A stretch of 63,947 nucleotides of DNA, filler included, from Sluysia triapertura (Eukaryota): the NCBI GenBank assembly GCA_046118255.1. It is 5 parts of 5 records of this genome, joined end to end, with 100 filler letters (N's around TTAATTAATTAA, not from the genome) between each part and the next. Parts side by side here need not be neighbours in the genome. Positions count along the whole stretch, not along the records: positions 1 to 13,220 come from JBJNIA010051892.1; 4 more parts are not named here. One strand, written 5' to 3'. A program made the translations under genes and the position numbers. A model generated the notes under the pieces. It had not been told where the DNA came from. It searched no databases and was given only the letters and a program-made list of their open reading frames with translations. Positions 51 through 13,220 of this stretch are shown here, piece after piece; position 1 is the stretch's first letter, and each line of letters starts with the position of its first letter.

Positions 51-232
51 ACAAATTGAAGATATAGACGGATTCAAATCGAGTTTTGTGTAAGATATAG
101 ATACCAACTTATACGTAGGGATTTTTTTAAACTTAAGTTACAGTTTCTTAAGTAAATCATAATGCAAATCTGTTAAAATGTGACATTTACATATTTGCCA
201 AATCGTACAAATTAACTAAAACTATAGCAAAC

Positions 233-1222
233 CATTTCTAAAATTATTCCTTTTAATTTGTCACGGCTAAAAATAACACCGACTTCTTTACCAACAAAAT
301 AATCCAAAAGTTTACCCATGGGATAACTAATTGGAAATGTTATGCACATAAAACAAATTGTAATCCAAATCGTTTTTGAACCTATTATCAATGGGTATCT
401 AGACGTCACAGCTTGTGGAATAATTTCACCAAGTAAAACAATCAAACCTGTCGCTATGATAGTTGCAATAAAACCGTTGCTAAATATAGAATCTAAAATA
501 ATAGAAATAGTACTATTTACAAGTACATTTCCTAGTAACAAAGTCGATAACAAATAGTTACCATTTCTTCGAACTTTCATTATTCTTTTAGCACATAAAC
601 GTTCGTATTCGTTTCCAGATTCAATTAAAATTTGCAAATCCGAAATAGAAAGTGACATTAGCCCAAGATTAAGTCCACTGAATAAAGCAGATAAGCAAAA
701 TAAAATCACTAATACACAAATCACAATATAATCAGGAAATGGTTTAATTTCAAGCATAATTGTTGTATCATCACTTGTACCCTGATGTACCCAATCGAAA
801 ACTGTTAAGTTATTTATATCTAAAATATCCATTAATAAATCATATCATAAATAAATCTTACGTAAGACATAAGAAATACATAAATAATATTTTGTGTTTT
901 TTAAACCTGACAAAAACTCAACTGTTGCTGCCAATGTATCATATTCATAAAAAACCGGAAATGACATAGTCGTACGAAAGCTATCACAACCTCCACTTGT
1001 ATTATCCACATGTGTAAATGAAATTCCAGAAATATTTACCAAGCCGTCTCCAAACAAATATAATTTTACTTTCTTTCTTAGAGGTATTAATAAATGATTA
1101 TTTTTAAACGCAATATCGCTATCACGAGATGATACTGAATAAATTTTTGAAATGCAATACATAAAATCCAAATAACAAAATAAATACAGTGCTATGCAAA
1201 ATTCTAAACTTGATATTACCAT
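233..1222 (-). CDS. CNNM: CNNM/unextended-family metal (Mg2+) transporter, 5' part: exon 1222-862, intron 861-820 (42 nt), exon 819-233; continues off window
   Basis: Signal peptide and extracellular region ending YYLC. A GTAAGA...TTTTAG intron removes an in-frame TGA and joins to ...WVHQG. The CNNM/DUF21 domain follows (LSALFSGLNLGLMSL, GNYLLSTLLLGNVLVN, GEIIPQAV, FPISYPMGKLLD, SRDKLK). Next donor GTTTGC at 232. Confidence 0.92.
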
Positions 1223-1527
1223 GTAAATTAATGAATTATCTTCATTTTCAATTCTTCATTATATTTCAAGTTAAACTAAAACTACATAAAATATTTTATT
1301 ATTATAATATAATTATTATTATCATTCGTTTTTTAATGTTATTTTAAATTTATAAAATAATTCTCTAATATTAAAAATATTATTGGTCAATCATTTTTAA
1401 AAATGACTCATTTAAACAATTGTATATAATTAAAAAATTATACATTTATTATATTAAAGTTCAATCATTTGAAATATAGGACAAGTAATAAATGGAGATA
1501 CATCTTGTTATATAAAACATTATATTT

Positions 1528-1887
1528 TCAATCATTCATTGGACTTAAATGTTCCAATTGTCCATATCTATTAGATTCGAAAACGACATTAATATTTTCT
1601 GTTTGGAATTGATTGTTAGAATTATTTTGTCTTGAAGCCAATTTATCACTTTTCATAAATTTTGACATTGCTAAAGTCATTGCTGCTGGTTTCTGATTCA
1701 TAGATTTTTTCATATTAGCTTTAATTGAATCTTTTAATCGAACTTTGTCCAATGATTTACTAACACTGGATGAAGTTTTACGACCTCTTAATCTTCTTTT
1801 CATACGATAGTTATGAAATGAGCCGACTAAATATCCTATAAAAAGAAGAGCAATACATAAATGAACAATCCATATATACGATGTCAT
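1528..1887 (-). CDS. small single-pass membrane protein, unknown function (119 aa)
   Basis: ATG-to-stop ORF with an N-terminal hydrophobic helix (YIWIVHLCIALLFIGYLVG) followed directly by a basic cluster (RMKRRLRGRK). It sits head-to-head with the innexin locus. Confidence 0.5.
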   Translation of the reverse strand: MTSYIWIVHLCIALLFIGYLVGSFHNYRMKRRLRGRKTSSSVSKSLDKVRLKDSIKANMKKSMNQKPAAMTLAMSKFMKSDKLASRQNNSNNQFQTENINVVFESNRYGQLEHLSPMND

Positions 1888-2261
1888 AGAAAATGTTTAG
1901 TATTAGAAAGAAACTCTATTTCTAAATTTACTTTTGATTGGATACTGCAAAGACACACATTTTACAATTATAAGACTATTTTCAGATATCCCTTATTCTT
2001 ATATTGATTTTTACAAGTATTTATCATTTTTTTTATATTCTACATCTATCTGTGTATTTAAATTAAAATTTTATTAACTTATAAGATATATAAGATTAAG
2101 GTATATAATAAAATCTGTTTTAAATTTAGCATTATTTGTATTTACTAGATTTGTACTTGATTTGAAGTGCTAAATTTAAATTTTATAATTGTTTAAATAA
2201 CTTGAAAATATCTTAATTATTTAAGTGTTACTTTAAATTTTTGAAATATTTAGTATTTATC

Positions 2262-2667
2262 ATGTCAATAACAGCCTCTTTTTTAGGATTCATTCGGGAA
2301 TTTAATTTATTGTCTTTTAAGGAAAGTCGGGATAATGATTCAGTTGATCGTCTAAATAGTCGCCTTAGTGTAATTTTCTTAATAATTTTCTGCGTTTTGG
2401 TTAGTTCTAATCAATATATTGGCAATCCAATACATTGTATGGTTCCAGTAGAATTTTCTGACTTTTGGCAGGCTTATGTAAATAATTATTGTTGGGTTAA
2501 AAGTACTTATTGGGTACCTCTATCTAATCAACCAAATTTTCCGAATCACGAAGAAAGAATAACGAATGAAATAAATTATTATCAATGGGTTCCAGTGGTA
2601 CTTTTGTGTCAGGCTGCTTTATTTTTCATGCCATCACTTTTTTGGAAATTATTTAACTGGAATTTTG
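2262..2667 (+). CDS. inx: innexin, alternative 5' coding exon V1 (N-term, TM1, EL1, TM2)
   Basis: DNDSVDRLN, QYIGNPIHC, YVNNYCW, YYQWVP, QAALFFMP..FWK. Ends TTT G|GTTAGA, a phase-1 donor at 2668; unspliced read-through hits a stop immediately. Confidence 0.9.
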
Positions 2668-2911
2668 GTTAGAATTTATAAAACGCAAAAGTAACTTTAA
2701 ATAAAATTCTACTTTCATATTAATAATTATTTGTATAATAATTGAAGCAAATTTTCATTAAAAAAATAATTAGAAAAATTACGAATATTATTTTTAAATA
2801 TTTTTTAATGTATTCAGTGTGAGTGAGCATTTGGTTAAAATGTTTGATTGAAGTTCAAGTAGAATCTTAATCAAGTTTTATTTTAATGTCATTTATAATA
2901 TTTGATTTCTA

Positions 2912-3302
2912 ATGAATGATTTGTATAAATTATCGTCAGGTTTCGATTTAATATATCGGAAAAACAGAGATGATGATTTTATTGATCGTTTAAATAACTT
3001 TTATACAAGCTTTTTATTAGCTTTAATTGCAATTTTTATAAGTGCTCGTCAATATATGGCTGATCCGATAGTGTGTTGGGTTGATAGAGAATTCACCGCA
3101 GCATGGAATCAATATGTTGCAAATTATTGCTGGATGCAGAATACATACTTTGTACAATCGGATAGTTCATTGCCTTCAGATTATCATACTCGAAATGAAC
3201 TGCAAATTTCATATTATCAATGGGTACCGTATGTGCTTGTACTACAAGCTCTTTTATTTTTTGTTCCAAAAGCAATATGGAAATTATTAAATTGGCAAAG
3301 TG
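2912..3302 (+). CDS. inx: innexin, alternative 5' coding exon V2 (N-term, TM1, EL1, TM2)
   Basis: DDDFIDRLN, QYMADPIVCW, YVANYCW, YYQWVP, QALLFFVP..IWK. Ends AGT G|GTAAAT, a phase-1 donor at 3303 at the same homologous Gly as V1. Confidence 0.9.
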
Positions 3303-3483
3303 GTAAATTTAATTATGTAAATTGGACAACTTGTTTTTAGATTTCGAGATTTAAAGACGTTATAATAAACAATAATTAAAATAAGAATTTCTAATCCAAT
3401 GTAGGTAAAGATACAAAATCAGTAATAATAGAGCATGTACCGATTACATAAAATGGATATTGAAATTGCTTATTTTGTCGCAG

Positions 3484-3813
3484 GTATCAATGTACAAGAA
3501 ATTATCAATAAAGCAATGTCTTTGTGTTTCATTATTCGAGCAACTCCTACACCGGAACAAGAGAAATCGCCAGAAGATGAATTAAAAGAACCGCTGGTGC
3601 CTGATGATATAAAAAATATAGCATATAATCTGGAAACAGCAGTTGATGCGTTGTATGAAGAGAAGACGTTTATGAAGCGCTTTTGTGGTGCTATTGCATG
3701 TTGTATAGGCAATAGACGGTTTGATATCTATTTGGTGGTTTTATATTTATTTACAAAAATACTCTATATAGTTAATATTATTGGTCAAATATTTCTGGTC
3801 AAGGTTTTCATTG
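3484..3813 (+). CDS. inx: innexin, shared downstream exon (cytoplasmic loop + TM3)
   Basis: Acceptor tattttgtcgcAG|GT ATC AAT gives G-INVQEII, the expected continuation after TM2. TM3 reads YLVVLYLFTKILYIVNIIGQIFLVKVFIG. Donor G|GTTTGT at 3814. Confidence 0.88.
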
Positions 3814-3866
3814 GTTTGTTTTAGTCTAACTTCTCTCCGATAATAACCTTTTACATAAGACATTTT

Positions 3867-4202
3867 AAAATTGTTAGATTTTAAACAAACAAACAAAGTT
3901 TTGTTTTTTCTTTGAATATTTTTTGTTGTTTTTTACCAATTCAAGTAATTCCATCATCTAATTCCAGAATTTACGTTCTTGATGTAGAATAAAATTTCAA
4001 AGCAAATATACTTACAAATTCATAAAGCAATTATACATGCTCACTAGAGATGTTATGCTATTTGGTATTCTGCTATTTTTTAGCTGTTAATTAAAATAAC
4101 GTTATCAGACTGCTATCACAATCGCAAAATAGCAGCTATTAATATTAAATATTAATATTAATATTGCATTTTTTATATAAATTTAATTTTGTTAATTTTT
4201 CT
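3867..4202. repeat. ~335-bp direct repeat, copy 1
   Basis: Aligns by eye with 4801-5140; shared blocks include aatttacgttcttgatgtagaa, aaatttcaaagcaaatatacttacaaattcataaagcaattatacatg and ctgctatcacaatcgc. Confidence 0.85.
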
Positions 4203-4513
4203 TTATTTTTGTTAAAGAATTATAATTCATTTAAACATTAGTAAGCATAAGCTGGTTTGCATTAGTTTGTGTGATTGCCAGTATTCATTTCATTTTCACG
4301 TCAATAGAAGCATTGGATTTTTCCTTTTCCTGTCTAATTCGTAACCTCGCATTCTCTTTTAGCTTTTATTTGCTTTTACTTTCGATTTAAGAACATTATG
4401 GTTTATTATAAAACATCTTGCATTTGTAAATCGAAAATTTATATTCAAAGAAGTTGTATATAATTTAAACTTTGACCTACAAATAAATCTGCATTTAAAA
4501 GAAATATAGTAAC

Positions 4514-4718
4514 CTGCCAAACACACACTGAATTATCAGGCATGGAATACGAGGATACTTGCTTACCGTCTGGACTGAACACCAAACTAGTAACTCGCCC
4601 AGAATGACCCGGTAGTGAAATGTATTTACCGATCTTAACATCATAAAACACGACATATCCATTTTTTGTTCCAACACAAACTTTACCGCTTCCAGTATGA
4701 CTAGCCACTATTCGAAAC
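4514..4718 (-). pseudogene. WDR7: isolated WDR7/Rabconnectin-3beta C-terminal WD40 exon
   Basis: ttcAG|G...CAG|GT boundaries. RFRIVASH..KVCVGTKNGYVVFYDVKIGK..LPGHSGRVTSLVFSPDGKQVSSYSMPDNSVCVWQ matches the WDR7 C-terminal repeats. No intact flanking exons found. Confidence 0.7.
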
Positions 4719-4800
4719 CTGAACATTGTAAATGTACAAACATTAAGTATTATGATTTAACTTAAAGAACATGTAATAAGTCAAAGATACTAAAAATGTT

Positions 4801-5263
4801 AAAACTGTTAGATTTTACAAACAAGGTTTCGTTTTTTCTTTGAATACTTTTTGCTGTTTTTACAATCACCTAATTCCATAATTTACGTTCTTGATGTAGA
4901 ACAATCATCAAGAATCAAATTTCAAAGCAAATATACTTACAAATTCATAAAGCAATTATACATGTGCACTATTTGGTATTCTGCTATTTTTTAGTTGTTA
5001 ATTAAAAATAACGTATCAGACACTGCTATCACAATCGCGAAATAGCAGCTATTAAATAACAGCGACTCGTTGAAATATTAACAGACATAATAATGCATTT
5101 TTGATATAAAGAATTAAAATTTAATTTTGTTAATTTTTCTAATATCTAATTTTTTAATTTACATAATATTTAATTTATAAGAAACAGAAAAATACATTTT
5201 ATTTATGAAGTTTTTTTACAGTGGTATTATGATTTTTTATTAAAAGGTTTGCGCACACCTGTA
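4801..5263 (-). mobile_element. direct repeat copy 2, extending to a Tc1/mariner-like terminus
   Basis: 4801-5140 duplicates 3867-4202. From 5263 the minus strand reads TA-CAGGTGTGCGCAAA, a TA target plus CAG end. Confidence 0.55.
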
Positions 5264-6054
5264 CTAAGTAACTTATAACGCAAAGCAGACTCCACTATAG
5301 AATGTTATTATAAATTTATAATTTTTAAACAAGGTACAGTATACTGAATCATAGTTGTATAAAATACTTTGTCGAGCTAGTTAGTGCAACACTAACAATT
5401 CAATTATATTAATCAGATATTAAAAATTAAATAAAAAATTAAACAAAAACGTATTAAATGAACGTATTTGGATACACACAATCATTTATTTTCGATTATT
5501 ATCGAACTCTAACTTTACTAGGCTCGTAAATGCGACAGTTTAAAAATAGGATGGATAATTTTTATTAAGTATCTATCAATCAAGTCATTTTATAATTAGT
5601 TTCTACATCGTGTAAGTTAGTTAAATTAAGTTCAATTAAATTAAACAAATACAAACATGTTAATAAAAATAGCTTTATTCAACTGTTTGTCAATTAAATT
5701 TATAATTTACTGATAGTACTTACTGATCATTTTATCGATATTGCGAGACCCACCAAATATATAACTATAAATTGTAGTGAAGATCTAAATTTCCAACGCC
5801 ATTCTTACAAAATTTACTTCATAAAGGTGATGGTGCAAATGCATTCCAAATGTTTCATACAAAGAAAGAATATCATTAATTTTTACTACATCCGAATTGT
5901 ATTTTGTTCGGTGTTAATAATTACGTTAAATTTCTGGTTTGGTCAAGCAAGAATAAAATTTGTAAAGTTAACTTTCTAACATACTTAATTAATATTATTC
6001 TGATCATATTAATGGCCTAAGGTGCCATTTGGTAAAATTGACAAACTATTAGAC

Positions 6055-6095
6055 GGGGCTGATAGCTCAGTGATAGAGCATTCGACGCCCGGCCA
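6055..6095 (+). pseudogene. tRNA-Cys-like fragment with internal deletion
   Basis: ggggctgatagctcagtgatagagcattcgac closely resembles the 5' half of eukaryotic tRNA-Cys. Anticodon loop and T-arm are missing; an oligo-T run follows. Confidence 0.55.
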
Positions 6096-6312
6096 GTATT
6101 TTTTACGAATATTAACAATTATAGTTAATTAAAAGTGATTGAATGGATAAAAATTTCAGTCATTTTGTAGAAGAAATTATTTCACAAGAAAATTACACGT
6201 AACTACGTGATCAGTTAACACAAGTTCATTCATACTTAAATTATTTTAATAAAGTTTTATTCTGCATTTATTATCAAGTTATGAATCTTCGTGTATGCTA
6301 CAGTTAGTAACA

Positions 6313-6313
<1 letters not shown>

Positions 6314-6361
<48 letters not shown>
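6314..6361. repeat. (TTA)n microsatellite
   Basis: Perfect trinucleotide run. Similar runs at about 8308-8366, 25813-25879, 30615-30679, 32845-32896, 33587-33629 and 58137-58169. Confidence 0.95.
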
Positions 6362-7676
6362 TTGTTCAACATAAATCAGGTTTTTTAATTAACTTCATAT
6401 CGATTATAATCGAATATAAACGATTATTTATACGTAATAATTATCTTTCAGTATATATTATTTTGCTTTATGGAGAACGGTCTAGATCATGAATGTAGTA
6501 ATAACACAAAGCAAATATTAAGATATAAGAAATCTCGATACTAATAAAGATTATACAAACTATTTTACTGTATAAAATAAGTCGCAATAAACTGTGACAA
6601 TTCGGCACGCATAAAAATGACAAACTCATAAATGTTTAAACATTAATGGACATGAAGACTGGCGTCAATGGTGCATAAATACACAGACACATTAAGAATG
6701 TATCCAATAACATTTGTTTCTTAGTAACGAAAAGAATTTATTTTATATTCTACATTTTATTAGATATTCTATCAAGTCAAATTTCTGACTTATATCAAAT
6801 GTGATACTTTTTATGGAAAATTATTTGAAATCTTTTCTGAAAGTTGAATCTAGAAAGGTCTGCTGAAAATACAATTAATTTTAATTCATAAACATGGCAC
6901 ATTATTTTCCATATAATTCTCATTTGAAAATGTCATCATTTTACAACTGAGAACATCTATTATTCTATTTGCAATTGTTTATTAAATACATAACTAATAT
7001 TTTTATTGATGTTTTTAAAATAATGGTTTTACTGTTTTTACATTTTTAAATCGATTTTTAACACAGTTGGTTTGGTTTTGTACTTAATGACCTTCAATAT
7101 TTTTGATGTGTCAATAATAATAATAATTACTAATTATCATTCAATATTTTAAACTTACTTCTTGATATCATAGTGCTTTTATATGAAATAGCTAATTTAA
7201 ATTGAGATTACATAGAGATAATATAAATTCAAAATTTAGTAACAAATAACAATCATTTTTAAGTCGAAATAGTATGAGTAACCATTTTAAAGTGAGATTG
7301 TTTAAAGACAACATGAAATCACAGTTAATAAAATCATTTTAAAATAGAATTCATTAAAAGAATTATGAAATTAAATTTTAAGGGCCTAATATCCGATCAA
7401 AATTGTCTTAAAAACAGGGGGTTTAGAAAATTATGTTAAATAAAATAAAATTTAAATTTAAAAGCATAATGATCGATAAAAATTATCTTAAGTTAAGATT
7501 ACATAAAACGAACATAGAAAATAAATTTAAAAACATTTAAAAAGCCGAAAAGCTATTGTTAATGCTAATAATAATAATAGCAAAAAATAATAACAATAAT
7601 CAGAAAATTAGTGATTGTTGAATATGACTGTATAAATTTGCTAATTTTATGACTGTTATCAAATTAATCATTTATA

Positions 7677-7756
7677 TTAACACATTATGAGCGGGGCGGG
7701 TATTATTACCCGTTTTATGTACTGTCACTTAAGAATACCCGCTCATAATGTGTTAA
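7677..7756. mobile_element. 72-bp TTAA-flanked micro-MITE (piggyBac-type)
   Basis: TTAA-cacattatgagcggg ... cccgctcataatgtg-TTAA: perfect 15-bp TIRs with TTAA on both sides. Confidence 0.8.
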
Positions 7757-7830
7757 CTATTTTTAAAAATTATTTGCGCTTAGTAAACATGTCCAGAATT
7801 CAAATTCTAATAATGACATAATGACTTATT

Positions 7831-8305
7831 TTATATGTCTAGAAAAACTTTACTAACTAAACCATTACTAAAACAGGAAGAATTGTTACGGTTTCTGTCG
7901 TAATTAGATTGTGATGTATTAGCAAATCGACTGATAATTATTCGTTTATTACGTCTAATGGAAATCAATCGTGGTGTATTAGGATTAGTGTTGACAGATG
8001 AAGTATCCGACTTGGAATAAATTGATTGTTTTGGACGAAGATTAACGGCATTGTTTTCATGAATATTTAATGGCGAAGTAGATTTAGGTATTAACATTGG
8101 AGATATCGGTTTAGTCTTTGGTGACCTAGATCGTGGTCTTAAATTCGGTGATATTGGTGAAGTAGAACGTGTATTTGATGACGGCGGCCTCAGATATGGT
8201 GATGCTGACCTGGATATGGGCGACTTGGACTCACTAGATGCGGATTTCTCTTTTAGTTTTGGAATTCCATGTTTCAAATAACTTGCAAGATGCTTGAGAT
8301 TATAT

Positions 8306-8366
<61 letters not shown>

Positions 8367-8414
8367 TGAGAACTCCACTATAAATAATTTTGCATTTATA
8401 AATATTTTGAAACT
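7831..8414 (-). CDS. Ser/Pro/Arg-rich exon of an unidentified gene
   Basis: Frame is stop-free from 8430 down to the stop at 7831 and GC-richer than its flanks. Repeated SP motifs (SPIS, SPYL, SPNL, SPKT, SPML). Candidate acceptor ttttcAG at 8415 and candidate donors near 7855-7862; boundaries uncertain. Confidence 0.5.
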
Positions 8415-8519
8415 CTGAAAATAAAACATTTTAAGTAACATTATGTTGAATTTACTTTACAATATCTAAATATCTAAGAATATCCACTTTAGAAAGGGTT
8501 AAAAACTCAATGTATTGTC

Positions 8520-8800
8520 ATAAACACCAAAAAGTACACAGCAACACCTTTAAATAAGAAGATGAAGTCAAAATTAGCATACAAATATTAAAAAGAAGGC
8601 AAAAATCCATCACACCTAATTAATACTGATAAAGCACAGATGCTAATAAAACATGGAAGATCAACTATAAATGAATTCTAGCAGGCATAAACAAATACTA
8701 TCCAGCAAAAAGATATAACTGAATAAGTACATAATTGCTATTATAATATGAATCAGTATATTTAAAGTACATTGTCAAAGCGGCAATATGTACTATAATT
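8520..8800 (+). mobile_element. decayed non-LTR retrotransposon RT-proximal fragment
   Basis: Frameshifted translation EDEVKISIQ.LK.EGKNP..AQML.KHG resembles the LINE ORF2 E.EV..AI..LK.GK.PG.D.I.AE.LK motif. Confidence 0.4.
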
Positions 8801-9355
8801 ACCTAGTATTTAGAGAAAACTGGTTATGTAGAGATAGTATAAGAACCAACACAAAATTAATGTAGAATTATATATTTTTTATTTTTATTTTTATTATGGC
8901 ACGTGATTGCTTTAGAATTCGTTGTTGTAACTGGAGATTGTTGCTTCAGATTATTCGAACTATTTTGGTGACTAAATATTTGAAATATTTAATAATTCGA
9001 ATTGTTTAAATAGGTTGAAAAGTTTCATAAGTGAATGCAATAAAGTAATTGCCACATATTAAAATGAAAAATAAAATATTAAAACAAAATCGTAATTCTC
9101 AGTTTAGCATTATTTCTTAATTTTTATTGTTTTCTTTGTACAATTTTTTCAGTTGTAGTTCTTCATTTTATTTGAGAAAAACAATTAAAAACTTGAACTG
9201 GTAGAGTAAATAGCACTATATCTCTGTTAAACACAATAACTCGTAATTACCATCACAGCACGTTTATGAACATGGAAAACATATCAAAAATTAAGATGAA
9301 TGATGCAGCCTTATCCGTCAACATGTCCAAATATCACACTCATACGAATAATAAA

Positions 9356-9392
<37 letters not shown>

Positions 9393-10079
9393 TTGATTTT
9401 AAAATAAGTTATAATTTCGAAAAATAAAATAAGCCAATTTTTTCTTTCTTTATCGCGTTATTTAAACTTATTTTAATCTTTGGTAAATGCATAAAAAACA
9501 CAATTTACAAATTAAACTCACATCTGCCATATTCGTAATTTATAAGCTTAATGCAACGTTAAGATTTGTAGAATGTGTAATGGTGAATTAGAATCTTGAT
9601 TCCATTTGAAAAATTAAGAAATATGATACAGTTCAAATTAACAGACAATACTTTATAAAATTCTATTGGGTTTCGCGAAATTTAGGTACATATAGAGCCA
9701 ATTGAAAACACTAAAATTGTGCTATTCAAGCACCTGATATCAATAGTTTAATTTTTATTAATTTTATTCATATTATCAATAGAACAATGTAATAGTGTAT
9801 AAGAAATTTAGTATTTTGCATTTTTATCCATTTTTACACAATATATGTGAGAAAATAATGAGTATGTGAGATGTGATGTTTTTGTGAAACAATAAAATTC
9901 AGATAGCATGAATGACAAGTACATTGATAATAAATGGCAACCAAAATAAATTTGAATAATTTTATGAATTTAAATATTCTTATTTATATAAATTTTGTGA
10001 AAATATGTACATTAAATATTTTCTCATAAATATTTATTATTTTTTTATATATTATTTTTATATCCTGACAAATAATCAT

Positions 10080-10460
10080 TTATAGAGTTATAAAGCTATA
10101 TAGAATTATGCATACTAATACAATGTACACAGATAAAAGGCCATGATTACACTTCTTATATTTGAAGAAAATCATTGTTTTAAAATCTGTCTGTCCATTA
10201 CTACTGACTATTTCAAATGGTGTAATACAATAAAAATATATGTCATATTTTAGATACTCTCTTAATTAAACGATGAGAACATAAAATTTAAATTTGAAAA
10301 CTTAATTTGAATGAATGAAACAACAATTAACTTTGGCTTTAAATTCGGTTTCAATTAGCGAACGTTCTACGAATTTATTGATATCGTCTGATATATACTT
10401 CCAAGAAAAGTTTGATCCCAAAGTCTTACCAGTATGTGATATTTGTTCTTGTGCTAAACT
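10080..10460 (-). CDS. possible two terminal exons of a surface protein with hydrophobic C-terminus
   Basis: Two neighbouring open frames; the second ends ...KKCNHGLLSVYIVLVCIILYSFITL*, which looks like a GPI signal. Splice phases do not join cleanly. Confidence 0.25.
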
Positions 10461-10621
10461 ATAATTAAAATTAGTTAATTTAAGAATTAAGATATTATTA
10501 AAAATTAAAAACATGAAAATGAATTATATACAAATACGATTAAGTTTTACAGTATATTTTTGATATCAAATGATAATTTATTATTTTTGCCCATTTCGTA
10601 GGAGCAAGTAAACTTGTACTT

Positions 10622-10849
10622 TTAACCCGTTAACCAAGTGCACAATCTTTTAACTATGCAACGTATAGCGGACTCACGGCATTTCTGAAGGACATGTGCC
10701 AATAATTCACACTGTAGCAGGAGAGAAACACATATCCCACCCGTTTATACACACTACATATTTTAAATAACGTATTACCACGTCTTACCCGATGTGCATT
10801 GCTTTGTATGTGCGACGTATGGATACGTCCAACCCGGTTAACAGGTTAA
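10622..10849. mobile_element. 220-bp piggyBac-type MITE
   Basis: TTAA-cccgttaacc ... ggttaacagg-TTAA (1 mismatch in 10-bp TIR), with subterminal palindrome gacgtatggatacgtc. Confidence 0.7.
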
Positions 10850-12439
10850 TACTTTAAAAGGTTTTAAAAAGTATTTAATAAATTGCAGTAACTACTTACT
10901 GCAGTTTATAAAAAAAATATTTGTAACAATGATGCTAGACAACTTAACTGATTCGGCTTAAAACTTGCAATAGACTTGCCTGTAACTAGAATACTGGCAT
11001 GTGATGAATAATTGCCTACATTCCTAACTTCCTAACTCGTTTAATCTACTTTTATACAAATTTAAATTTGCAAATGCAATAGTTTAATACCTTCACTTAT
11101 AATTTATCTTAATCCTAGGGTCAAAAACCAATACTTACATATGTTTATTGATTACTCACAAATCGTTCATGAAAACAATTTACACGAGAAATTAATATTT
11201 TAAACAAATTTAACAAAATCTAAATGGTAAAATATTTATCAATAAGTATAACAAAGATTGTCAAAAGTGTACAGTAGAACAGTATCAAAAGAAAATGTAA
11301 TCAAGCTTTAATTTATGTTTAAATATTTGTTGCCTTTAATCTTTTAATGAACATAAAAGCTTAAGGTGACTGTAGCCCACATTAAATCGGTCGAAATAAA
11401 TTAAAACGAATTTAATGTATATTTCAAGATTTGTTATAAAACTAATCATCCATAGTAAAAAAATATACTTAAGTTCCTTTTACGTTTACTAATAAATTGG
11501 CAAATAATCAAATATGTTTTCCAATATGGCCGCTGCTGAAGTGACCAAAAATTAAATTAATAATGATAATAATTAGTAAAATTGTGGCAAATTGTAAAGT
11601 GTGAATTTAGTTGATAATCTGTTTATAAAAATACTAATTATGTACTTTAATATGTAATTTTAGTTATATGAATTATTTACTTATTTTAGTAAGTAGGTAA
11701 TTTTTACTTACAAATATTGATAATATCATTTCCCCAAATAGAGCAATGACACAACCTAACAATAGTAACGCATTTGCAATGTAATAAATTAGGTCTTACA
11801 CATTTGCCTTTCGTGTCTGGGTATGTTTTTCAAGATGCCTTTTTTGTGATATGAATTTTTTGTATAGTTTAACATTTTAGAATTTGGTACAACAGAATAG
11901 TACATTAATGTGAAGGAAATCTAGTTTCGCCGAATGGATTTTATTGAATTTGAAATGGTCTCACTTATGTTCATTAATATATTTGTAAGGACACTAATAT
12001 TATTGTGAGTGATGAAGCAAAAGGTAATGTTCTTTATTCTGATAATATAATCGTGAAAATATTCATACGAATTAAAAATTTTATAGATTCATGACATGAA
12101 ACTTCGTTCATATCTAAATGTACATCTTACGGGAATCTTTGTTAAGTGAGTTTATTATAAGTTTTATAACTTTCACATTATTTGGTCTTAGACTTCGTAA
12201 TTTATTTATAATTTAAGTCAGTTTCGAACTTCGTTAAGATTTATTTCAACCTTAAGGTTTTTAATAAATATTTAACATAAAATAGTCACTAAATGAGTTG
12301 TATAAAACTACAATTAAAATATGAGAATTACCACTTATTCTTGGTAGCGCTAATGAATTTTCCACAGAATAATGATGAATCGTTAGATAATGTTGTGTAT
12401 TAAGTAGAAACGAAATTGATTCACTTTTTTGTTATTGTC

Positions 12440-13100
12440 ATGTGTGTACGAAATCATATTTGTCCATTGCAAATGAAAAATTCCAAAGTTTTCCTCAACT
12501 TCATTTCTCTTTCATCATCTTCCTCACTATTCTACACCTTTAATCCATCAGTGAACACCACATAGTCATCAAGTGAATCCATAAGTTTAAAAAACCAATG
12601 AATACCAGTCATTTCAACTTGAATGTTATCAGTAGGAATAATAGCTTCTTGGCCTTGTTTAACATCATTTACAAAACTAGCAACATTCCTTTATAAGCTT
12701 TCTTTAAACCTAAAAATTCGCCACGTTTTTCAACAGTATAATTTAACATTGTTTTTAATAATGATTTCGTGTATTTCTAGTAAAAGAAATTTTTTAACTT
12801 TCTGGATTTCCTTGACACGTATCATGCTGATTTCGTTTATTAACATTAATTTTCAACTTATAGTGAACTAAATTTTGAGCTAACGGTATATTAGCACAAT
12901 AACTTCCATAAATCAACAGTTCTTCTTTAGCATGAATAAAAATATTGCGTAATTTCAAATTAGATGGCACAGCAGCATTTGTTAATTTAAATAGCAAAAC
13001 TTGATATCTTATATCATTAGATATTTTATTTCGTTTTTTGTAAAGATTGCCATTTATTGCCAATTCTTCAACTTTAGCAAAATATTTATCATCTGGATAA
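12440..13100 (-). pseudogene. VAV: Vav-like RhoGEF DH-PH fragment, frameshifted
   Basis: IFIHAKEELLIYGSYCANIPLAQ / KYTKSLLKTMLNYT..GEFLGLKKAYKGM / VASFVNDVKQ / SLDDY..TDGLKV follow Vav DH-then-PH order, across at least two frameshifts and stops. Confidence 0.7.
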
Positions 13101-13220
13101 TTAACTTAATTTCTCTGAAAACCATCGATATTATTTTGCTTTGATTAACCCCTTACCGGTTTTATTTTTTTTCTGTGAATGGTCAAAAACTGACTTAATT
13201 TTTTTTTTTAAATTTAACTC

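What the first reader, a model, noticed from the sequence alone, without database searches (positions are those of the whole stretch)
2101..3813. Innexin with two tandem, mutually exclusive N-terminal-half exons sharing one downstream exon (variable/constant gap-junction cassette)
Seen: V1 (2262-2667) and V2 (2912-3302) each encode a complete N-terminus-TM1-EL1-TM2 module with its own ATG, both EL1 cysteines and YYQWVP. They are only 244 bp apart, too close for V1 to have its own 3' half. Both end in a phase-1 GT inside the same Gly codon, and both fit the single acceptor at 3484 in frame (NF-G-INVQ or QS-G-INVQ). They are strongly diverged (roughly 40% identical by eye) yet free of stops, while most nearby duplicates are decayed. 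Established: the innexin N-terminus and EL1 influence gating and docking. Drosophila shaking-B makes Lethal and Neural isoforms with different N-terminal halves, and their heterotypic pairing gives rectifying synapses. Clustered protocadherins and UGT1 use variable/constant exons. Inference: this may be an independent origin of exon-encoded gap-junction docking or rectification diversity in a probable spiralian. Caveat: EL2/TM4/tail exons were not found on this contig, so a functional full-length gene is not proven.
Basis: partly seen in the sequence, partly recalled or inferred. Interest (0 to 1): 0.9.

Follow-up and report, generated by a model that had tools for sequence, protein, structure and literature searches.

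The report
Flatworm innexin with two alternative first exons
A flatworm gap-junction (innexin) gene carries two tandem, anciently diverged first exons, each encoding the front third of the channel and each fitting one shared downstream exon; the layout is conserved in a planarian and resembles the fly shaking-B gene, though no RNA from this animal was available to show that both exons are used.

Summary
V1 (2262-2667) and V2 (2912-3302) are intact innexin N-terminus-TM1-EL1-TM2 modules (Pfam E 1.6e-37 and 5e-36). Each has an ATG and a phase-1 G|GT donor that fits the acceptor at 3483/3484.

The gene is the flatworm ortholog of planarian innexin-1. Dugesia japonica innexin1, named as a cloned gene in the literature, and Girardia tigrina Q9NCL5 both join a V1-type half directly to the shared part. 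A metagenome contig from a planarian relative (L078) has the same V1-spacer-V2-intron-C layout.

V1 groups with V1 and V2 with V2 across species, and a V1+V2 sister pairing within this genome is rejected (AU p=0.012). Both exons show coding-type constraint, while the spacers cannot be aligned. In a third, unidentified organism, two transcript-like contigs share a 99.4% identical 3' part. They switch exactly at this Gly codon between a V2-type and a V1-type half.

The missing EL2-TM4 exon probably lies on contig C88441 (67% identical, phase-compatible).

No RNA run exists for this genome, so use of V2 here is inferred. This is a new member of a known kind (shaking-B-like alternative 5' exons). 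Interest is moderate.

The parts
2262..2667 (+). V1: alternative first coding exon (N-terminal helix, TM1, EL1 with 2 Cys, TM2 with YYQWVP). It begins with an ATG and ends on the first base of a Gly codon. The transcription start upstream is unknown.
   Evidence: Pfam Innexin E 1.6e-37. Aligns to INX-6 residues 5-128. 53% identical to the N half of Dugesia innexin1 and 48% to V1 of L078. V1 clade support 95/93.
2668..2911 (+). 244-bp spacer. It is the 5' part of the V1-to-C intron (donor GTTAGA at 2668) and must also hold whatever starts V2 transcripts (a promoter or a trans-splice site).
   Evidence: Sequence. Cannot be aligned with the 242-bp spacer of L078: score 25 against 22.1 +/- 3.9 for shuffles.
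2912..3302 (+). V2: second alternative first coding exon with the same domain content. It has its own ATG, no usable in-frame acceptor upstream, and ends on the first base of a Gly codon (donor GTAAAT).
   Evidence: Pfam Innexin E 5.1e-36. 55% identical to V2 of L078, clade support 98/87. dN 0.35 with dS saturated.
3303..3483 (+). 181-bp intron between V2 and the shared exon. Its polypyrimidine tract and AG at 3482-3483 form the single acceptor used by both V exons.
   Evidence: Sequence. L078 has the equivalent ...ttttag|GTATTAATGTGCAAGAA.
3484..3813 (+). Shared exon C: completes the Gly codon, then encodes INVQE..., the cytoplasmic loop and TM3. It ends with a phase-1 donor (ATT G|GTTTGT).
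   Evidence: Pfam Innexin profile 119-184. Its best hit among 1.84 billion representative proteins is Dugesia japonica innexin1, E 1.1e-12. Clade with L078_C, Dugesia and Girardia, support 95/93.
3862..4225 (.). Interspersed repeat of about 365 bp lying in the intron after exon C (or at an assembly break point). It is not part of the gene. A second copy lies at about 4817-5160.
   Evidence: 1572 first-look candidates in the genome. The 40 copies scored are 78-88% identical over query positions 83-446. Logan word depth is 10^4-10^5. Internal copies are shown.

Best explanation
This is the 5' two-thirds of the flatworm ortholog of planarian innexin-1. The gene has two alternative first coding exons. 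Each encodes a complete N-terminal helix-TM1-EL1-TM2 module with its own start codon.

Transcripts that begin at V1 splice 2667^3484 and remove V2 as part of the intron. V2 has no productive acceptor, so it cannot be included as an internal exon. Transcripts that begin in the 244-bp spacer use V2 and splice 3302^3484. Choice is therefore by start site (or, less likely, by spliced-leader trans-splicing), not by competing cassette exons.

Both products share the cytoplasmic loop, TM3, EL2, TM4 and the tail. The next exon (EL2-TM4) most likely lies on contig C88441. The two subunits differ in the pore funnel, the pore-lining TM1 and the docking loop EL1. The gene can therefore build two kinds of hemichannel, probably in different cells, by analogy with ShakB(N+16)/ShakB(L).

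Shown here: the anatomy, the orthology, the conservation of the layout, the selection on both exons, V1-type to C joins in two planarian database proteins (cDNA-derived as far as I know), and both forms in transcript-like contigs of another organism.

Inferred: use of V2 in this animal, the start mechanism, the link to C88441, and any physiological difference.
For: - Anatomy and splice phases.
- Contiguity in an independent contig.
- The best hit of exon C in the whole library is Dugesia japonica innexin1, whose sequence runs V1-type ...NWTLG then INVQELVTKAM. Girardia tigrina Q9NCL5 (439 aa) is V1-type plus C through to the C terminus.
- L078, from a planarian relative (V1 76-81% identical to Dugesia and Girardia), carries V1 at 64-469, a 242-bp spacer, V2 at 712-1104 and the acceptor ttttag|GT. 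Its C exon runs on through EL2 and TM4.
- Trees: V1 clade 95/93 and V2 clade 98/87. win_V1+win_V2 as sisters is rejected, AU p=0.012.
- Constraint: codon-position identity runs 2>1>3, dN is 0.40 and 0.35, dS is saturated, and the spacers are at shuffle level.
- The P0009/P0031 contigs L081/L082 are 838/843 identical from the Gly codon to the end of the 3' UTR. They are 73% identical in the 5' coding part and have unrelated 5' UTRs. P0009 is V2-type and P0031 is V1-type.
- The C88441 exon is 67% identical to L078 EL2-TM4, against 52-59% for the next best. Its acceptor ag|GT completes the Gly codon, and it falls in the same clade, 95/93.
Against: - No RNA run of this organism is on record. The only run holding the stretch is DNA, so neither junction has been seen here.
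- No transcript joining a V2-type exon to the innexin-1-type shared part was found for any flatworm. The C parts of P0009/P0030 fall outside the innexin-1 clade.
- The contig runs 9.4 kb past exon C without the EL2-TM4 exon and carries a WD40 exon on the other strand. C88441 shares no sequence with the window. The gene is therefore either split by an intron longer than 10.9 kb, or the contig is misjoined at the repeat, or this copy is truncated.
- Two of the donors (V1 GTTAGA, exon C GTTTGT) have T at +3. That is unusual in most animals, and I could not calibrate it for this genome.
- 244 bp is a small space for a separate promoter.
Confidence: 0.78

Rival explanations
1. Only V1 is used. V2 is a silent relic of an old tandem duplication that sits in the first intron.
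For: All flatworm database proteins found for this orthogroup (Dugesia innexin1, Girardia Q9NCL5) are V1-type. No V2-type transcript with an innexin-1-type shared part was found.
Against: V2 is intact in two lineages whose neutral sequence cannot be aligned. It keeps its ATG, both Cys, YYQWVP and the phase-1 donor at the same Gly codon, with 55% amino-acid identity, codon-position identity 0.68/0.72/0.54 and dN 0.35 against saturated dS. At about 0.09 stops per codon in 26% G+C DNA, 130 open codons are not expected in a relic. A V2-type mRNA-like contig exists in two other organisms.
Confidence: 0.07
2. This copy is a truncated, non-functional 5' fragment of the gene (V1, V2, C only), cut off near the repeat at 3862. 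The C88441 exon belongs to another paralog.
For: No EL2/TM4 sequence lies in the 9.4 kb downstream, and a convergent WD40 exon follows. A high-copy repeat starts 48 bp after exon C. Other isolated innexin first exons exist in this genome, such as C218029 and C255255. C88441 and the window share no sequence.
Against: All three exons are open and splice-competent. Exon C ends on a clean phase-1 donor just where several other innexin hits of this genome also end (profile about 181-184). C88441 supplies a unique, phase-matched continuation of the same orthogroup, and no second copy of exon C exists in the genome.
Confidence: 0.1
3. V1 and V2 belong to two overlapping or adjacent genes with separate 3' exons, so they do not share exon C.
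For: V1 and V2 are as diverged from each other as separate paralogs are.
Against: Only one shared-type exon follows the pair in both species. V1-type is joined to this very exon type in Dugesia and Girardia. The P0009/P0031 pair shows that both types can share one 3' part. There is no room for V1's own 3' exons in 244 bp.
Confidence: 0.04

Closest known systems
Drosophila shaking-B (ShakB(N+16) and ShakB(L) transcript variants)
   Same: One innexin gene yields subunits that differ in the first third and share the rest. Heterotypic pairing of the two forms gives a rectifying electrical synapse (PMC2663713, PMC5412853).
   Different: In ShakB the shared sequence starts at the extracellular end of TM2 (PMC5412853). 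Here TM2 is part of the variable exon and the switch is at a Gly codon on the cytoplasmic side. The lineage differs (flatworms), the two exons are only 244 bp apart, and function is untested.
Planarian innexin-1 (Dugesia japonica innexin1, BAE78821.1/Q2L6M2; Girardia tigrina Q9NCL5)
   Same: Orthologs of the V1-plus-C form. It is the best hit in the whole library, and both halves form clades with 95/93 support. Dj-inx1 is used as a gastrodermis (gut) marker (PMC4014983).
   Different: Those records describe a single product. I found no mention of a second, V2-type first exon. Window V1 is only 53% identical to Dugesia, so the window's species is a distant flatworm.
Variable-first-exon / constant-exon genes (clustered protocadherins, UGT1A)
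   Same: Tandem homologous first exons, each with a start codon and a donor but no acceptor, all joined to one constant acceptor. The comparison rests on my own knowledge.
   Different: Only two variable exons are present. There is no evidence for stochastic choice, and each variable exon's promoter is not demonstrated.
C. elegans unc-7 isoforms
   Same: One innexin gene gives isoforms with different N termini and different rectification behaviour (PMC7455501 abstract; PMC2694797).
   Different: By my own recollection (I did not read these papers' text), the unc-7 isoforms differ in the cytoplasmic N-terminal extension, not in a whole TM1-EL1-TM2 module.

Membership tests
Innexin (Pfam PF00876) | Profile match above the curated cut-off | tested here: met
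   V1 129.9 bits, V2 125 bits, exon C 25.6 bits, against a cut-off of 25.
Innexin (Pfam PF00876) | Two conserved cysteines in EL1 and the YYQW(VP) motif in TM2 | tested here: met
   Both are present in V1 and in V2, and these columns are invariant in the nine-sequence alignment.
Innexin (Pfam PF00876) | Complete four-TM subunit with EL2 (2 Cys) and TM4 | tested here: inconclusive
   Absent from the window. A phase-matched exon with ...MCDF...VQCVLPINLFNEK... and TM4 lies on C88441. Its linkage to the window and the C-terminal tail exon were not found.
Planarian innexin-1 orthogroup | Monophyly with Dugesia innexin1 and Girardia Q9NCL5, to the exclusion of this genome's other innexins | tested here: met
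   N half (V1) 95/93. The C exon and the C88441 exon 95/93. Dugesia innexin1 is the best hit in the library.
Alternative-first-exon (variable/constant) gene | Two or more tandem homologous exons, each with its own ATG and donor and no productive acceptor, in the same phase to one acceptor | tested here: met
   for the window. The same holds on L078.
Alternative-first-exon (variable/constant) gene | Transcripts joining each variable exon to the constant exon | tested here: inconclusive
   V1-type joins are seen in Dugesia and Girardia database proteins. Both types on one 3' part are seen in L081/L082 from an unidentified organism. No RNA exists for this genome, and no flatworm V2-plus-C transcript was found.
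Alternative-first-exon (variable/constant) gene | A separate transcription start for each variable exon | not testable with these tools
   No RNA ends are available. The 5' UTRs of L081 and L082 are unrelated, which fits separate starts.
shaking-B-type arrangement (same intron as in flies) | Shared sequence begins at the extracellular end of TM2 | tested here: not met
   Here TM2 (YYQWVP...NW..G) lies inside the variable exon. The ShakB boundary is taken from PMC5412853.

The most novel reading that the evidence does not exclude
The V1/V2 pair may be an ancient alternative-first-exon system, maintained by selection, in innexin-1-like genes of flatworms and possibly beyond (the organism of P0009/P0031). 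It would let one gene make two hemichannel types with different pore funnels and docking loops. These could be deployed in different cells to build heterotypic, possibly rectifying, junctions. The system would have arisen independently of fly shaking-B, at a different intron. V2 might be selected by a start site, or by a spliced-leader acceptor, inside a spacer of only about 240 bp.
Probability: 0.35. Interest if true: 0.65.

Novelty: new member of a known kind. Interest (0 to 1): 0.5.

Why it matters
Innexin genes that swap the channel's front third are the textbook explanation for a rectifying electrical synapse in flies. This finding points to the same design in flatworms, conserved between distant lineages with both exons under selection. 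If both forms are used, isoform-level diversity of gap junctions would be older or more often reinvented than one fly gene suggests.

It also matters for planarian work. 'innexin-1' is used as a gut marker, and probes or RNAi against the shared part would hit two different proteins. The large innexin counts reported from planarian transcriptomes (46 contigs in D. ryukyuensis, PMC12654950) may partly reflect isoforms.

The claim is directly testable with existing planarian RNA-seq.

Tried and rejected
- **RNA evidence.** The look-up of sequencing runs gave one run, and it is DNA. No junction could be tested.
- **Search with window V1.** The search for homologous proteins found nothing, limited by word matching and the length window.
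- **3' exons in the window.** A weak tblastn hit at 11106-11297 is full of stops and is noise.
- **Apparent homology past the stop at 3822 (TFY..FKIVR).** This is rejected, because FKIVR lies inside the interspersed repeat that starts at 3862.
- **Linking C88441 to the window.** No shared sequence was found.
- **JGI metagenome scan with V2-type exons.** It gave only distant innexins at 28-43% identity.
- **Another isoform pair.** P0054/P0073 looked like one but is uniformly 81% identical.
- **Naming the species.** Not possible. An Atlas search with the neighbouring CNNM exon was uninformative. The paralog on C64967 is 57% identical to a Spirometra protein.
- **Joined model.** All searches, alignments and trees used the exons separately by reference.

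Full report
**1. The observation**

- V1 runs from its ATG at 2262 to 2667, the first G of a Gly codon, followed by GT.
- V2 runs from its ATG at 2912 to 3302 and ends the same way.
- The spacer between them is 244 bp.
- The AG at 3482-3483 precedes GT-ATC-AAT-GTA-CAA. Either V exon therefore completes Gly and continues I-N-V-Q.
- The shared exon ends at 3813 on another phase-1 donor, with a stop at 3822-3824 if read through.

Pfam calls V1 and V2 Innexin at E 1.6e-37 and 5.1e-36 (profile 1-113). It calls the shared exon Innexin at E 8e-6 (profile 119-184). V1 aligns to residues 5-128 of the solved INX-6 structure. V1 and V2 are 40-43% identical. A Logan contig of the only public run covers 1500-3918 with no difference, so the order V1-V2-C does not depend on this assembly.

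**2. What the gene is**

I searched the shared exon alone against 1.84 billion representative proteins. It has one clear relative: Dugesia japonica innexin1 (BAE78821.1/Q2L6M2), a 236-residue partial protein record. Its first 136 residues are V1-type: 53% identical to V1 and 47% to V2. They run straight from ...NWTLG into INVQELVTKAM..., which is the junction predicted for 2667^3484. The 439-residue Girardia tigrina protein Q9NCL5 has the same build through to the C terminus. The window's gene is thus the ortholog of planarian innexin-1, and the genome is a flatworm's. At 53% identity it is a distant one, and I could not name the species.

**3. The layout is conserved**

A protein 75% identical to Dugesia innexin1 (P0012) lies on an 1845-bp ENA metagenome contig, L078. 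That contig carries, in order:
- a V1-type exon at 64-469, with donor G|GTAATG;
- a 242-bp spacer;
- a V2-type exon at 712-1104, with its own ATG and donor G|GTTGAT followed at once by a stop;
- a 97-bp intron ending ttttag;
- a shared exon starting GT-ATT-AAT-GTG-CAA, which there continues without interruption through TM3, EL2 (two Cys) and TM4 to the contig end.

**4. Age and selection**

In a tree of N-terminal halves, window V1 joins L078 V1, Dugesia and Girardia (95/93). Window V2 joins L078 V2 (98/87). Forcing window V1 and V2 to be sisters is rejected (AU p=0.012). The duplication is therefore older than the split of the two flatworms. Within this genome, V1 and V2 are no closer to each other than to first exons of other innexin genes.

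Between the two species:
- V1 is 48% identical in protein, V2 55% and the shared exon 46%.
- Codon-position identity follows 2>1>3.
- dN is 0.40 for V1 and 0.35 for V2, while dS is saturated.
- The spacer, the intron and the upstream DNA align no better than shuffled sequence.

Both V exons have thus been kept as coding sequence in both lineages.

**5. Both forms in transcripts elsewhere**

I made a profile from separate exon rows (never joined) together with P0009, a 401-residue innexin that had appeared among the weaker hits of the search. A search with this profile returned P0031. P0009 and P0031 sit on intron-free contigs of 1.3 and 1.5 kb, from two sister ENA assemblies. Each contig consists of a 5' UTR, a full ORF and a 3' UTR.

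From the Gly codon onward the two contigs are 838/843 identical, including the 3' UTR. Before it the coding parts are 73% identical and the 5' UTRs are unrelated. P0009 has a V2-type half. P0031 has a V1-type N terminus and a V1-type CWVKNTYWV motif, and placing it in the V1 clade is not rejected (p=0.38). This is the predicted pair of products, switching at the predicted codon, in an unidentified organism of higher G+C. Its shared part falls outside the innexin-1 clade. I therefore treat it as a parallel or more distant case, not as proof for flatworms.

**6. The missing 3' half**

Nothing in places 3814-13220 encodes EL2 or TM4. An interspersed repeat of about 365 bp, with over 1,500 candidate copies, starts at 3862. 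A WD40 exon lies on the other strand at 4445-4726.

Using L078's EL2-TM4 segment as a query, the best match in the genome is C88441:4478-4819(-). It is 67% identical, against 52-59% for the next hits. Its acceptor ...gaaag|GT-AGC completes the Gly codon left open at 3813. This gives FIG-STYNWFG, against FIG-TTYRFFG in L078. The exon also falls in the innexin-1 clade (95/93).

C88441 and the window share no sequence. Three readings remain: the intron exceeds about 10.9 kb and holds a gene on the other strand, the contig is misjoined at the repeat, or this copy is truncated. The tail exon was not found.

**7. Mechanism**

V2 has no productive acceptor. Transcripts begun at V1 must therefore remove it with the intron, and V2 can only be a first exon. 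The design is alternative first exons on a constant body.

The variable module holds the N-terminal helix, TM1, EL1 and TM2. By analogy with ShakB and INX-6, these are the parts that line the pore and dock to the partner hemichannel. Type-specific residues conserved across species are concentrated in these parts.

Different cell-type expression is inferred, not shown. Dj-inx1, the V1 form, is a gastrodermis marker (PMC4014983). Different junction properties are likewise only inferred.

**8. Comparison and verdict**

[quoted passage not shown] Here the switch is after TM2, so the intron differs and an independent origin is plausible.

My literature searches found no description of alternative N-terminal exons in flatworm innexins. 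The library is not exhaustive, however.

I rate this a real, conserved feature and a new member of a known kind. Confidence in the alternative-first-exon reading is 0.78. Interest is 0.5.

Noticed in passing
window 212-832 (-): An open exon encoding a CNNM/DUF21 transmembrane domain (Pfam PF01595, E 2e-34). The gene runs off the low end of the contig.
   Followed up: partly
window 4445-4726 (-): An exon encoding a WD40 repeat (PF00400, E 7e-8), convergent with the innexin. Either it is nested in a long innexin intron or it marks the true end of the locus.
   Followed up: partly
window 3862-4225 and about 4817-5160; also 6009-6175: A high-copy interspersed repeat of about 365 bp. It has 1572 first-look candidates in the genome, and the 40 copies scored are 78-88% identical. 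Logan word depth reaches 10^4-10^5. A second very deep stretch lies at 6009-6175. ARAGORN finds no tRNA-like part in it.
   Followed up: partly
window 2668-2911 and L078 470-711: The spacer between V1 and V2 is 244 bp in the window and 242 bp on L078, although the two sequences cannot be aligned. This may be chance, or a constraint on length.
   Followed up: no
G000 C218029:11911-12300 and C255255:964-1278: Isolated innexin first exons of the same subfamily, with no further innexin exon in the next 3.5-4.7 kb. This genome has either long first introns or many stranded 5' fragments. It holds more than 120 innexin exon matches in all.
   Followed up: partly
L081 and L082 (ENA ERZ3792524, ERZ3792534): Two transcript-like contigs from an unidentified organism (47-49% G+C). 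They share a 99.4% identical 3' part and carry different N-terminal halves, which is direct evidence of the same isoform design elsewhere. L090 (Logan SRR8820898) is a V2-type relative whose called ORF starts 16 codons too late.
   Followed up: partly
window 6314-6361, 8308-8366, 9347-9390: Perfect or near-perfect trinucleotide arrays: (ATT)16, (TAA)20 and (AAT)15. The first underlies a poly-Tyr pseudo-ORF.
   Followed up: no
window 7831-8277 (-): A 148-codon open frame rich in Ser, Pro, Arg and Asn, with no Pfam match. It may be an exon of the gene on the minus strand.
   Followed up: no
G000 C235520:2041-2580 and C12577:867-1325: In these paralogs the reading frame runs straight through the Gly codon (..NWMSG-IDIHH.., ..SWQTG-IHV..) without a GT donor. 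The phase-1 intron used by V1, V2 and C64967 is therefore not universal in the subfamily.
   Followed up: partly
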